A DNA stretch of 62,934 nucleotides, filler included, from Octopus bimaculoides (lineage: Eukaryota): assembly GCF_001194135.2 (NCBI RefSeq). It is 12 parts of 11 records of this genome, joined end to end, with 100 filler letters (N's around TTAATTAATTAA, not from the genome) between each part and the next. Parts side by side here need not be neighbours in the genome. Positions count along the whole stretch, not along the records: positions 35,606 to 46,632 come from NC_068987.1; 11 more parts are not named here. One strand, 5' to 3'. The notes under the pieces were generated by a model. The model was not told where the DNA came from and ran no database searches. It worked only from the letters and a program-made list of their open reading frames with translations. Of the stretch, positions 35,606 through 36,642 are shown piece by piece (positions within the stretch are counted from its first letter, which is position 1; every line of letters starts with the position of its first letter). Position numbers and translations under genes: made by a program.

Positions 35606-36639
35606 TATCGAGGTCTTTATTCACATTATTTTTCTTCCATATTTTATATGTATGTGTTGTTGCGTTTTCGTTTTTTGGGTAGAGCACTGCTGTGAAATAA
35701 GCGTGTAGGATCGAAATGTATTCCTCACATGTCCATTTATGCCGTTTTGGTTTTGTTTGCAGGACATGAGGAACAACGTCCGGCCCTTTATTTTGACGGT
35801 CATCGTTTTCGTAGGGTACCGGTTCGTTCATTTCTGTTGTCAGATTGTTTTGCACGTTCAGATCTTCGTACTTTTTGCGTAACAAGCTTACAGTACGCAC
35901 TTCTCGGTTGTTATTCTTGGGTGGAATAATACCGGTGTTATTTAATCTGTTTGTATTTTTTTGTACATGGTGTTTGGATGCGGAGATGGTCTGATTTTAA
36001 TGTAACACGTGTGTTTACGATCGCTGTGCGGGTAGTGGAGGTATCAAGTTAAAATACATCATTATATTTGGAAAAATAGAAATAAATTTCAATGAGTATT
36101 ACTTACTCGGATATAGTCCAACCCTTTGTCAGCTATTTTTTGGCTCCATGCGATGTCTTTATTTCCGATGTTTTTGAATAAATTTCGGAGCAGTGATTTA
36201 AACATCCCCGGTGTAGTTCGTTAAACATCCCCGGTGTAGTTCCGTTAAACATCCCCGGTGTAGTTCCGTTAAACATCCCCGGTGTAGTTCGTTAAACATC
36301 CCCGGTGTAGTTCTGTTAAACATCCCCGGTGTAGTTGGTTAAACATCCCCGGTATAATTCCGTTAAACATCCCCGGTGTAGTTCGTAAAACATTCCCGGT
36401 GTAGTTCGTTAAACATCTCCGGTATAGTTCCGTTAAACATCCCCTGTGTAGTTACGTTAAACATCCCCGGTGTAGTTCGTTGAACATCCCTGGTGTAGTT
36501 CCGTTAAACATCCCCGGTATAGGTCCGTTAAACATCCCCGGTGTAGTTCGTTAAACATCCCCGGTGTAGTTCGTTAAACATCCCCGGTGTAGTTCCGTTA
36601 AACATCCCCGGTGTAGTTCCGTTAAACATCCCCGGCGTA

Positions 36640-36642
<3 letters not shown>
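35606..36642 (-). mobile_element. 5' part of an R4/Dong-like non-LTR retrotransposon (5' repeat array, UTR, ORF N-terminus)
   Basis: The ORF contains KRHKWTCEEYISILHAYFTAVLYPK..TYKIWKKNN, resembling the R-x-KWT-x-EE N-terminal domain of R4/Dong ORFs. Truncated by a gap; abuts an (AAT)n tract at its 5' end. Confidence 0.7.
36198..36642. repeat. Tandem array, 19 units of TTAAACATCCCCGGTGTAGTT plus a variable 2-3 nt joint
   Basis: Counted by eye; unit 23-24 bp; joints CG/CCG/CTG/GG/ACG; no unique spacers. Confidence 0.95.

What the first reader, a model, noticed from the sequence alone, without database searches (positions are those of the whole stretch)
36198..36642. Telomerase-like reiteration of the 5' end of a retrotransposon: 19 copies of a 21-nt core with variable joints
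The array occupies the exact 5' terminus of the R4/Dong-like element, between the (AAT)n target and the 5' UTR. Cores (TTAAACATCCCCGGTGTAGTT on the cDNA strand) are nearly constant, while length variation is confined to the joint (C, CC, CT, G or AC before G). The last core abuts the target with no joint. This fits an RT that reaches the RNA 5' end, adds 1-2 non-templated bases (mostly C), re-anneals ~22 nt back and copies again. Template jumping and non-templated addition are established for R2-type RLE RTs. Processive ~19-fold reiteration of a short template would be telomerase-like, or like repeat-synthesising bacterial RTs. The alternative is an inherited promoter-monomer array as in mouse L1.
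Basis: partly seen in the sequence, partly recalled or inferred. Interest (0 to 1): 0.78.

Follow-up and report, generated by a model that had tools for sequence, protein, structure and literature searches.

The report
Repeat array capping a Dong-like retrotransposon
A jumping gene of the Dong type, which inserts into TAA repeats, carries 19 tandem copies of a 23/24-base unit at its very front end; the array is real, but it looks like an inherited, slippage-prone repeat rather than something a telomerase-like enzyme made in one go.

Summary
At 36198-36642 there are 19 copies of a 21-nt core. They are separated by 18 short joints: CG x8, CCG x7, CTG, GG, ACG. The array lies between an (AAT)24 tract and the unique 5' UTR of a minus-strand element.

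The 98-codon ORF fragment in the piece is the N-terminal domain of a clade of single-ORF elements that carry a reverse transcriptase (RT) and a restriction-like endonuclease (RLE). These elements are always flanked by (TAA)n, so "Dong-like" is supported.

Eight independent relatives start flush after (TAA)n and have no such array. The closest full-length relative, L037, has its own strictly 5'-terminal repeat of 11 nt x3.4.

The internal evidence argues against one-shot, non-templated, telomerase-like synthesis:
- The joint is essentially a CG/CCG dimorphism.
- Its invariant G is not templated by the unique UTR.
- 11 of the 12 core substitutions cluster in units 7-14.
- One variant (G16A) recurs in three units.

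My best reading is a heritable 5'-terminal array that grows by in-register realignment, probably of the cDNA on a multi-unit RNA, and is later remodelled as DNA. No other copy of this family could be fetched, so the decisive test is still open. I rate it a new variant of a known kind, of moderate interest.

The parts
36643..36714 (-). (AAT)24 microsatellite, i.e. (TAA)n on the element's sense strand. This is the upstream half of the insertion target. It has one interruption near its far end.
   Evidence: TRF reports 36641-36714, period 3, 24.7 copies, 97% matches. All eight relatives have the same repeat, in the same orientation, flush against their 5' ends.
36198..36642 (-). 5'-terminal tandem array of 19 cores. 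The sense strand reads AACTACACCGGGGATGTTTAA, with 18 joints between cores (sense CG, CGG, CAG, CC, CGT). The period is 23 or 24 nt.
   Evidence: Composition is GC 0.47 with CpG o/e 1.39. The RNA shows no excess structure (z = -0.28) and there is no Rfam family match.
35832..36197 (-). Unique AT-rich 5' UTR of 366 nt, lying between the array and the first ATG of the open frame.
   Evidence: GC 0.36. It has no significant similarity to the 5' UTRs of relatives.
35607..35831 (-). N-terminal 75 codons of the element's ORF, from ATG (MNEPVPY...KRHKWTCEEY...). The frame is open from 35900 and is cut off by the edge of the piece.
   Evidence: phmmer gave 26 hits. The fragment is 41% identical (E = 6e-13) to the N-terminus of an intact 1226-aa RT+CCHC+RLE ORF flanked by (TAA)n. 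It also matches the N-termini of about 25 full-length relatives.

Best explanation
The array is a heritable part of the 5' end of a Dong-like, (TAA)n-specific, single-ORF RLE retrotransposon. It is not a one-off by-product of a single insertion.

The repeating unit is the whole 23/24-nt period: the core plus a templated CG or CGG (sense strand).

I think the array was seeded, and is lengthened, when the nascent cDNA reaches the repeated 5' end of the element's RNA during target-primed reverse transcription (TPRT). The cDNA realigns in register on an internal unit and copies the distal units again. Telomerase and LINE 3'-tail slippage use the same logic, but here both units and joints are templated.

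Once in the genome the array is further remodelled by ordinary replication slippage or unequal exchange.

Its likely benefit is that it supplies promoter or initiation sequence and a redundancy buffer for the 5' end. This lineage shows no recognisable counterpart of the GC-rich 5' UTR of its relatives, which is ribozyme-bearing in Bombyx Dong.

Shown here: the anatomy, the clade, terminality, and the non-uniform age of the units.
Inferred: heritability through RNA, involvement of the RT, and any promoter role.

Probabilities:
- The array is inherited as a multi-unit array: about 0.75.
- RT realignment is the process that builds it: about 0.45.
- DNA-level processes alone build it: about 0.3.
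For: (1) The array is terminal and belongs to the element. (TAA)n abuts the array, not the unique UTR. In eight independent relatives (TAA)n abuts the first base of the element.

(2) There is a second, independent, strictly terminal reiteration. It is in the closest full-length relative, L037: (ATA)14 G (GGTAGCAGGAT)x3.4 GGTACCC. The repeat is 100% exact and bounded by a GGTA microhomology, which is the signature of in-register slippage without filler. Two terminal arrays in sister families point to a process acting at the terminus.

(3) The joints behave as templated sequence. G is present in 18 of 18 joints, 15 of 18 are C(C)G, and the substitution rate is like that of the cores.

(4) The G is not encoded next to the proximal unit (GTGAT|TTAAAC). 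A joint can therefore only be copied from an RNA that already holds at least two units.

(5) The units differ in age, and one variant has been duplicated. Eleven of 12 substitutions lie in units 7-14 (p about 0.004). G16A occurs in units 7, 10 and 14, each time followed by a CCG joint.

(6) The element is not CpG-depleted (o/e 1.3-1.5 against 0.75 in the flank), and its ORF fragment is near the consensus of its family. This is compatible with a young copy.

(7) Expansion of 5' monomer arrays during retrotransposition is already one of two models discussed for mouse L1 (PMC6454616). R2-type RTs do template-jump (Bibillo and Eickbush 2004, as cited in PMC2718515).
Against: - Only one copy of this family was seen, so heritability is inferred, not shown.
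- The array has N cores and N-1 joints, with the length-variable base sitting exactly in the part missing at the ends.
- The order of 23- and 24-nt units is random-like (runs test p = 0.2; no significant higher-order period). A stochastic choice at each addition explains this more simply than block duplication does.
- The six UTR-proximal units are perfect. A pure model of adding units at the 5' end predicts they should be the oldest.
- No promoter evidence of any kind was obtained.
- The draft assembly may misreport unit number and order.
Confidence: 0.45

Rival explanations
1. The array is an inherited promoter-monomer or minisatellite array that changes only at the DNA level, by replication slippage, unequal crossing-over or gene conversion. 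The RT merely copies whatever the RNA contains. The array is terminal because transcription starts inside or at the edge of it, so nothing upstream is carried along.
For: - Substitutions are clustered and one variant is shared.
- The joints are near-constant.
- The array is GC- and CpG-richer than the AT-rich UTR and flank.
- Relatives lack the array, so it is a lineage-specific addition.
- Unequal crossing-over is an accepted route for mouse L1 monomer arrays (PMC6454616).
Against: - It does not explain why the sister family L037 also has a repeat exactly at its first bases. An 11-nt x3.4 repeat is an unlikely promoter array.
- Arrays homogenised by unequal exchange usually have divergent edges and uniform centres. 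Here it is the opposite.
- No higher-order period is significant.
- A 23/24-nt unit is about a tenth the size of known LINE promoter monomers.
Confidence: 0.3
2. An RNA with a single 5' unit is copied to its end, the RT adds 1-2 non-templated (or cap-templated) bases, re-anneals about 22 nt back and repeats this about 19 times in one insertion event, like telomerase.
For: - The architecture is N cores with N-1 joints, contiguous with the UTR at one end and with the target at the other.
- The extra bases are mostly C on the cDNA strand, as expected for cap-dependent addition (established for retroviral RTs and inferred for L1; my own knowledge).
- The order of C versus CC is random-like.
- In the ten perfect-core units, both non-length changes fall in the joints.
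- R2-type RTs add non-templated bases and jump templates (cited in PMC2718515).
Against: - The invariant G of every joint has no template beside the proximal unit, so a single-unit RNA offers no base pairing for re-annealing.
- R2 jumps are end-to-end onto acceptor 3' ends, not onto internal sites.
- Units made in one event should be equally old, yet 11 of 12 substitutions sit in 8 central units (p about 0.004) and G16A recurs three times (p about 0.03).
- The related terminal repeat in L037 has no filler at all.
Confidence: 0.1
3. The array is not the element's own sequence. It could be a pre-existing or captured satellite (a template switch onto another RNA, or insertion next to a minisatellite), or its length and order could be an assembly artefact of a short-read draft.
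For: - The piece is a gapped draft with many microsatellites.
- Ten identical units cannot be ordered by short reads.
- The unique UTR and the array share no sequence.
Against: - (TAA)n-specific elements sit inside (TAA)n, and here (TAA)n touches the array, not the UTR.
- The unit was not found as an array anywhere else. There was nothing else in the window, 0 hits for a unit dimer in GTDB genomes and IMG/VR, and only single chance 18-mers in bacterial metagenome contigs. None of these collections holds the host genome.
- The central units carry enough variants to anchor an assembly.
Confidence: 0.1

Closest known systems
Dong (Bombyx mori), DongAg, DongBg and the R4 clade of RLE non-LTR retrotransposons
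   Same: - The target is a (TAA)n microsatellite, present upstream in sense orientation (PMC3812793).
- The N-terminal domain is shared with elements that have one ORF carrying RT, a CCHC finger and a C-terminal restriction-like endonuclease, flanked by (TAA)n on both sides.
- Relatives form head-to-tail clusters separated by (TAA)n.
   Different: - Bombyx Dong and Ascaris R4 have an HDV-like ribozyme at the 5' end that cuts a co-transcript at the first base of the element (PMC3774820).
- Here the first 445 nt are a tandem array, followed by an AT-rich UTR with no excess structure and no Rfam match.
- The RT, the RLE and the 3' end of this copy lie outside the piece and were not seen.
Mouse L1 (L1Md) 5' monomer arrays
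   Same: - Tandem units sit at the extreme 5' end, upstream of a unique linker and the ORF.
- How such arrays are kept or extended despite 5' truncation is an open question. Two models exist: expansion during retrotransposition and unequal crossing-over (PMC6454616).
   Different: - Mouse monomers are about 200 bp with mapped transcription-factor sites and measured promoter activity (PMC9022269, PMC11602158). Here the units are 23/24 nt and nothing is known about activity.
- The clade is different: L1 uses an APE endonuclease and has two ORFs, whereas this element uses an RLE and has one ORF.
SVA 5' (CCCTCT)n hexamer and VNTR (hominid composite retrotransposon)
   Same: A short tandem repeat of variable copy number forms the very 5' end of a non-LTR retrotransposon (own knowledge; SVA structure reviewed in PMC3287187 and PMC12593883).
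   Different: SVA is non-autonomous and is mobilised by L1. Its 5' repeat is a 6-mer. No mechanistic link to this element has been shown.
3'-tail repeat extension by template slippage in stringent LINEs (UnaL2, CR1/L2-type); telomerase; bacterial DRT2
   Same: A reverse transcriptase re-copies a short template after realignment and so produces tandem repeats. UnaL2/CR1 and telomerase are from my own knowledge. For DRT2 see PMC12039810.
   Different: - Those act at the 3' end of the template at initiation, or on a dedicated template RNA with built-in terminal redundancy.
[quoted passage not shown]
- RT involvement is inferred only.
R2 template jumping and 5'-junction variation
   Same: The RT superfamily is the same: the best solved-structure matches of the relatives are R2 proteins. 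R2 RT adds untemplated bases and continues on a new template. R2 and R1 5' junctions carry non-templated bases (PMC2718515).
   Different: The documented jumps are end-to-end onto a new molecule or onto target DNA and give a single junction. They do not give a periodic array.

Membership tests
Dong-like / R4-clade (TAA)n-specific RLE non-LTR retrotransposon | (TAA)n immediately upstream of the 5' end, on the sense strand | tested here: met
   (AAT)24 at 36643-36714 abuts the array on the minus (sense) strand. Eight relatives have the same arrangement.
Dong-like / R4-clade (TAA)n-specific RLE non-LTR retrotransposon | N-terminal domain homologous to that of bona fide members | tested here: met
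   The fragment is 41% identical (E = 6e-13) to the N-terminus of the intact L032 ORF. BLASTP hits fall at the N-termini of about 25 full-length (1150-1260 aa) relatives. phmmer gave 26 hits.
Dong-like / R4-clade (TAA)n-specific RLE non-LTR retrotransposon | Single ORF with RT, a CCHC finger and a C-terminal restriction-like endonuclease; (TAA)n at the 3' end | not testable with these tools
   The ORF is cut by the piece edge at 35606. These features were seen only in relatives: RVT_1 at 1.7e-29, zf-RVT, CRFC...H...C, RPDIV...D...K, best PDB hits R2, and 3' (TAA)n.
Dong-like / R4-clade (TAA)n-specific RLE non-LTR retrotransposon | RT phylogeny placing it with Dong/R4 rather than R2, NeSL or Hero | not tested
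   There is no RT sequence in the piece and no reference Dong/R4 sequences were on hand. The placement rests on target specificity and on the architecture of relatives.
Dong-like / R4-clade (TAA)n-specific RLE non-LTR retrotransposon | HDV-like self-cleaving ribozyme at the 5' end (shown for B. mori Dong and Ascaris R4, PMC3774820) | tested here: inconclusive
   Rfam found no ribozyme at E <= 1 in the window, and there was no excess folding energy. Rfam also found none in three relatives, so the test has little power. Pseudoknots are not modelled by the folding tool.
LINE promoter-monomer array (mouse L1 type) | Tandem units at the extreme 5' end, followed by a unique linker and the ORF | tested here: met
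   The array (36198-36642) is followed by the 366-nt unique UTR and then the ATG at 35831.
LINE promoter-monomer array (mouse L1 type) | Units of about 200 bp carrying transcription-factor sites | tested here: not met
   The units are 23/24 nt. No eukaryotic promoter tool was available.
LINE promoter-monomer array (mouse L1 type) | Promoter activity and transcription starts within units; unit number varies between copies | not testable with these tools
   This needs RNA 5'-end data, reporter assays and other genomic copies. No other copy was reachable.
Telomerase-like reiterative reverse transcription from one short template | The template offers a realignment site, so that the 3' end of the product pairs before each new round | tested here: not met
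   This holds for a single-unit RNA. The base beside the proximal unit is T on the cDNA strand, where all 18 joints have G, and the following bases do not pair with C or CC. The feature would be met only if the RNA already holds at least two units.
Telomerase-like reiterative reverse transcription from one short template | All units are made in one event and should therefore be equally diverged, with variants private to single units | tested here: not met
   Eleven of 12 core substitutions lie in units 7-14 (scan p about 0.004). G16A is shared by three units (p about 0.03).
Telomerase-like reiterative reverse transcription from one short template | Joint order and unit number are specific to each insertion | not testable with these tools
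   The close family members exist only as short ORFs on 0.9-2.4 kb Logan/ENA contigs, which the tools would not fetch.
Free-standing minisatellite or satellite unrelated to the element | The same repeat occurs without the element | tested here: inconclusive
   The unit is absent elsewhere in the piece. A unit dimer is absent from GTDB genomes and IMG/VR. Metagenome hits are single chance 18-mers in bacterial genes. The host genome itself was not searchable.

The most novel reading that the evidence does not exclude
The reverse transcriptase of this Dong-like lineage itself builds the array. On reaching the capped 5' end of its RNA it adds one or two C's, realigns and re-copies the terminal unit many times within a single insertion. 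That would be a telomerase-like, processive activity at the finishing end of TPRT. It would also explain how LINE 5' arrays regenerate.
Probability: 0.12. Interest if true: 0.8.

Novelty: new variant of a known kind. Interest (0 to 1): 0.45.

Why it matters
How LINEs keep a functional 5' end despite truncation-prone reverse transcription is unresolved. So is how 5' repeat arrays such as mouse L1 monomers are rebuilt; two untested models are still discussed (PMC6454616).

This case is a small single-ORF element of the R2 superfamily, whose enzymes are biochemically tractable and structurally solved. It has a short, sharply bounded terminal array, and a sister family has a second, simpler terminal repeat. 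That makes it a compact system in which RT-driven and DNA-driven array growth could be told apart by comparing genomic copies or by an in vitro assay.

It would also document a Dong-type element whose 5' end differs from the ribozyme-bearing one described for Bombyx Dong.

If the array turns out to be an ordinary inherited minisatellite, the finding is a routine annotation detail.

Tried and rejected
(1) I tried to fetch other copies of the same family.
- The word-index protein search with the fragment found nothing. With an alignment of 27 sequences it found only three distant proteins.
- The close relatives found by exhaustive phmmer sit on 0.9-2.4 kb Logan/ENA contigs and are not eligible for contig look-up.
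- Exact look-ups of six window ORFs found nothing.

(2) DNA scans were uninformative.
- The 18-mer in metagenome contigs gave 31 single hits, all in a handful of bacterial genes.
- A unit dimer gave 0 hits in GTDB genomes and in IMG/VR.

(3) I looked for a ribozyme or structured 5' end.
- Rfam gave only spurious sub-threshold CrcZ hits on the (AAT)n tract.
- Minimum-free-energy z-scores were unremarkable for the window and for two relatives.
- I made no claim either way for the relatives.

(4) I looked for a higher-order repeat in the array. The joint-length autocorrelation and the runs test were not significant. The 188-nt "copies" from the repeat finder are just 8-unit offsets.

(5) I tested whether the unit is homologous to the 5' ends of relatives. 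AACTACA(T/A)CCGG lies at nt 20-31 of one family (p about 0.02, uncorrected for five comparisons). This is too weak to use.

(6) The unique UTR has no significant similarity to relatives' UTRs.

(7) Pfam found nothing on the ORF fragment.

(8) I considered and rejected the idea that the array is coding. The only ORF through it is a 58-aa poly-Ile artefact.

Full report
**What is there.** The array is real and lies at the stated coordinates. Positions 36198-36642 (+ strand) hold 19 copies of TTAAACATCCCCGGTGTAGTT with at most 2 mismatches each. None is expected by chance and none occurs elsewhere in the window. TRF reports period 24, 18.9 copies and 91% matches.

Between the cores lie 18 joints. 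In order they are CG, CCG, CCG, CG, CTG, GG, CCG, CG, CG, CCG, ACG, CG, CCG, CCG, CG, CG, CCG, CCG. The last core runs straight into (ATT)24 at 36641-36714. The first core is contiguous with unique sequence (…GCAGTGAT|TTAAAC…).

The element lies on the minus strand. Read in sense the order is:
- (AAT)24;
- the array, as AACTACACCGGGGATGTTTAA with CG/CGG joints;
- a 366-nt AT-rich unique UTR (36197-35832);
- an ATG at 35831;
- an open frame that is cut by the piece edge at 35606.

Only about 1 kb of the element is therefore available. The piece is a gapped draft assembly with N runs of 580, 259 and 706. The count and order of the identical units cannot be checked here.

**What the element is.** Pfam finds nothing in the 98-codon fragment and the word-index search found nothing. 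An exhaustive phmmer search of 1.84 billion representatives found 26 relatives.
- The close ones (44-67% identity) are short ORFs on 0.9-2.4 kb Logan/ENA contigs. They are evidently other, mostly decayed, copies of the same or sister families. The window copy is close to their consensus.
- More distant relatives could be placed on contigs.

An intact 1226-aa ORF at L032:13963-17640 starts with the same KWTREEY-type domain (41% identity to the window fragment, E = 6e-13). It continues into RVT_1 (1.7e-29), a CCHC finger and a C-terminal RPDIV…D…K restriction-like endonuclease (RLE) region. Its best solved-structure matches are R2 proteins.

About 25 full-length relatives of 1150-1260 aa carry the window-like domain at their N-termini. 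Named members include uncharacterised proteins of Penaeus japonicus and Nothobranchius furzeri.

Every element I inspected is flanked by (TAA)n at both ends. They often lie head to tail in clusters separated only by (TAA)n. TAA microsatellites are the documented target of Dong elements of silkworm, mosquito and snail (PMC3812793). The label "Dong-like" is therefore supported through the N-terminal domain and the target. The reverse transcriptase (RT), the RLE and the 3' end of this copy were not seen.

**Does the array belong to the element?** In eight independent relatives the first base after (TAA)n is the first base of the 5' UTR: L032-E3/E5 = L035b, L032-E4 = L035a, L033, L034, L036, L037, L039 and L041. 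In the window (TAA)n touches the array, not the unique UTR. The array is therefore most simply the element's own 5' terminus.

None of the eight relatives has a 20-24-nt array. Their UTRs are 100-370 nt and 43-52% GC.

One relative stands out. L037 is the full-length relative closest to the window fragment (55% identity). It begins (ATA)14 G (GGTAGCAGGAT)x3.4 GGTACCCACC…. This is a second tandem reiteration placed exactly at the 5' terminus. It is 100% exact, has no filler between units, and is bounded by a 4-nt GGTA microhomology, which is the classic footprint of in-register slippage.

1. The joint is not free-form. G precedes TTAAAC in all 18 joints and 15 of 18 joints are CG or CCG. The three others are single changes, one of them a CpG transition. 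The substitution rate in joints (3/46) does not differ from that in cores (12/399; p = 0.19). The "variable joint" is essentially a one-base dimorphism of a 23/24-nt repeat.
2. The invariant G has no template next to the proximal unit, where the cDNA strand reads T, and the bases beyond would not pair with added C or CC. A single-unit RNA therefore gives the cDNA end nothing to re-anneal to. The joint can be copied only from an RNA that already has at least two units.
3. The units are not equally old. Eleven of the 12 core substitutions lie in units 7-14, while units 1-6 and 15-18 are perfect (scan-corrected p about 0.004). G16A occurs in units 7, 10 and 14, each followed by CCG (p about 0.03). 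A single synthesis event followed by uniform decay does not predict this. Stepwise addition at the 5' end does not predict it either, because the UTR-proximal units would then be the oldest.

- The array has N cores and N-1 joints, with the length-variable base exactly in the part missing at the ends. I estimate roughly a 1 in 10 coincidence for an arbitrary repeat phase.
- The order of 23- and 24-nt units is random-like (runs test p = 0.2).
- Within the ten perfect-core units, the only non-length changes are in joints.

**Most likely mechanism.** I read the array as a heritable, multi-unit 5' terminus. The two terminal repeats in sister families suggest a process that acts at the terminus. 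The best candidate is realignment of the nascent cDNA on an internal unit once it reaches the repeated 5' end of the RNA. This re-copies distal units together with their templated CG/CGG joints, and it also yields block duplications such as the spaced G16A units.

DNA-level slippage or exchange must act as well, to explain the perfect blocks on both flanks.

In Bombyx Dong and in R4 the 5' end is an HDV-like ribozyme that trims a co-transcript (PMC3774820). Here I found no structured or Rfam-recognisable RNA. That test also failed to detect anything in the relatives, so it is weak.

A promoter or end-buffer role for the CpG-rich array (CpG o/e 1.39 against 0.75 in the flank) is plausible but untested.

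My estimates:
- 0.75 that a multi-unit array is inherited through RNA;
- 0.45 that RT realignment builds it;
- 0.3 that only DNA-level processes do;
- 0.1 for the strict telomerase-like model;
- 0.1 for a captured or independent satellite, or an assembly artefact.

**Comparison with known systems.** The closest family is Dong/R4. The closest functional analogues are:
- mouse L1 monomer arrays, for which expansion during retrotransposition versus unequal crossing-over is still debated (PMC6454616);
- the SVA 5' hexamer repeat;
- LINE 3'-tail slippage and telomerase (own knowledge);
- the bacterial DRT2 system (PMC12039810), for repeat-making reverse transcription.

A strictly 5'-terminal short-unit array in an RLE element is, as far as my literature searches went, not described. 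I rate it a new variant of a known kind.

**What could not be done.** No second copy of the window's own family could be fetched. All 12 contig look-ups, the metagenome scan and the genome scans are spent. They are a straightforward genome-wide comparison for anyone with the source assembly.

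Noticed in passing
L037:1-100 (ENA ERZ17089924 NODE_560079, 4111 nt): The full-length Dong-like element closest to the window fragment starts (ATA)14 G (GGTAGCAGGAT)x3.4 GGTACCC. This is an exact 11-nt tandem repeat at the very 5' terminus, bounded by a GGTA microhomology. The contig ends in (TAA)n on both sides. 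The true ORF start appears to be the ATG at 376, not the called 530.
   Followed up: partly
window 41522-41800 (-): A 93-aa ORF matches the GIY-YIG catalytic domain (Pfam E = 4.4e-5, above the gathering score). It is probably a fragment of a Penelope-like retroelement and is unrelated to the array.
   Followed up: partly
window 36716-~37100 (+): The sequence immediately beyond the (ATT)n tract looks like a SINE-type interspersed repeat, and from memory it resembles cephalopod SINEs. ARAGORN finds no tRNA and Rfam finds nothing. The host organism was not identified.
   Followed up: partly
window 35869-35871 (-), codon AAG in the open frame upstream of the ATG at 35831: In a sister copy (P0004, MYEKLHIENHITT…) a Met aligns with this Lys, and another copy (P0012) is open still further upstream. 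The family's original start codon may lie upstream of the ATG used here and may be lost in this copy.
   Followed up: no
L032:2300-21500 and L035:5200-18100 (ENA ERZ25067903, Mb-sized contigs): Five to six Dong-like elements of at least two families lie head to tail, separated only by (TAA)n. This is expected if each insertion regenerates the target. Two families have conserved 5' ends: (C)GTCCTGGGTATGACATTAAACT… and GGYTCTMAAG…GCCGGGGTG….
   Followed up: partly
L040-L045 (GTDB genome contigs) and L039 (IMG/VR UViG_638275880_000022): Dong-like eukaryotic retrotransposon fragments are binned in bacterial MAGs (Cyanobacteria, Bacteroidota, Propionibacteriaceae) and in a Paenarthrobacter assembly. 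A complete (TAA)n-flanked copy sits in a contig filed as viral. This is likely contamination or mis-binning.
   Followed up: no
window 43068-43170 (+): A 34-nt tandem repeat x3.1 with 94% matches (AGTCGTATTCCTATAACTATTGAGAATGTAATAT). It is unrelated to the array.
   Followed up: no
window array unit versus L032:9738-9749 and L032:17832-17843: The motif AACTACA(T/A)CCGG lies at nt 20-31 of the 5' UTR of one relative family and resembles the start of the window's core (AACTACACCGG). The shuffle p is about 0.02, uncorrected for five comparisons. It may be chance, or a remnant of a shared ancestral 5' end.
   Followed up: partly
The search for homologous proteins versus search of protein representatives: Ten proteins confirmed to be cluster representatives in the collection, sharing many 5-residue words with the query, were not retrieved by the word-index search. 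Its index evidently does not cover short Logan/ENA contigs, so negative results from it are weak for eukaryotic repeats.
   Followed up: partly
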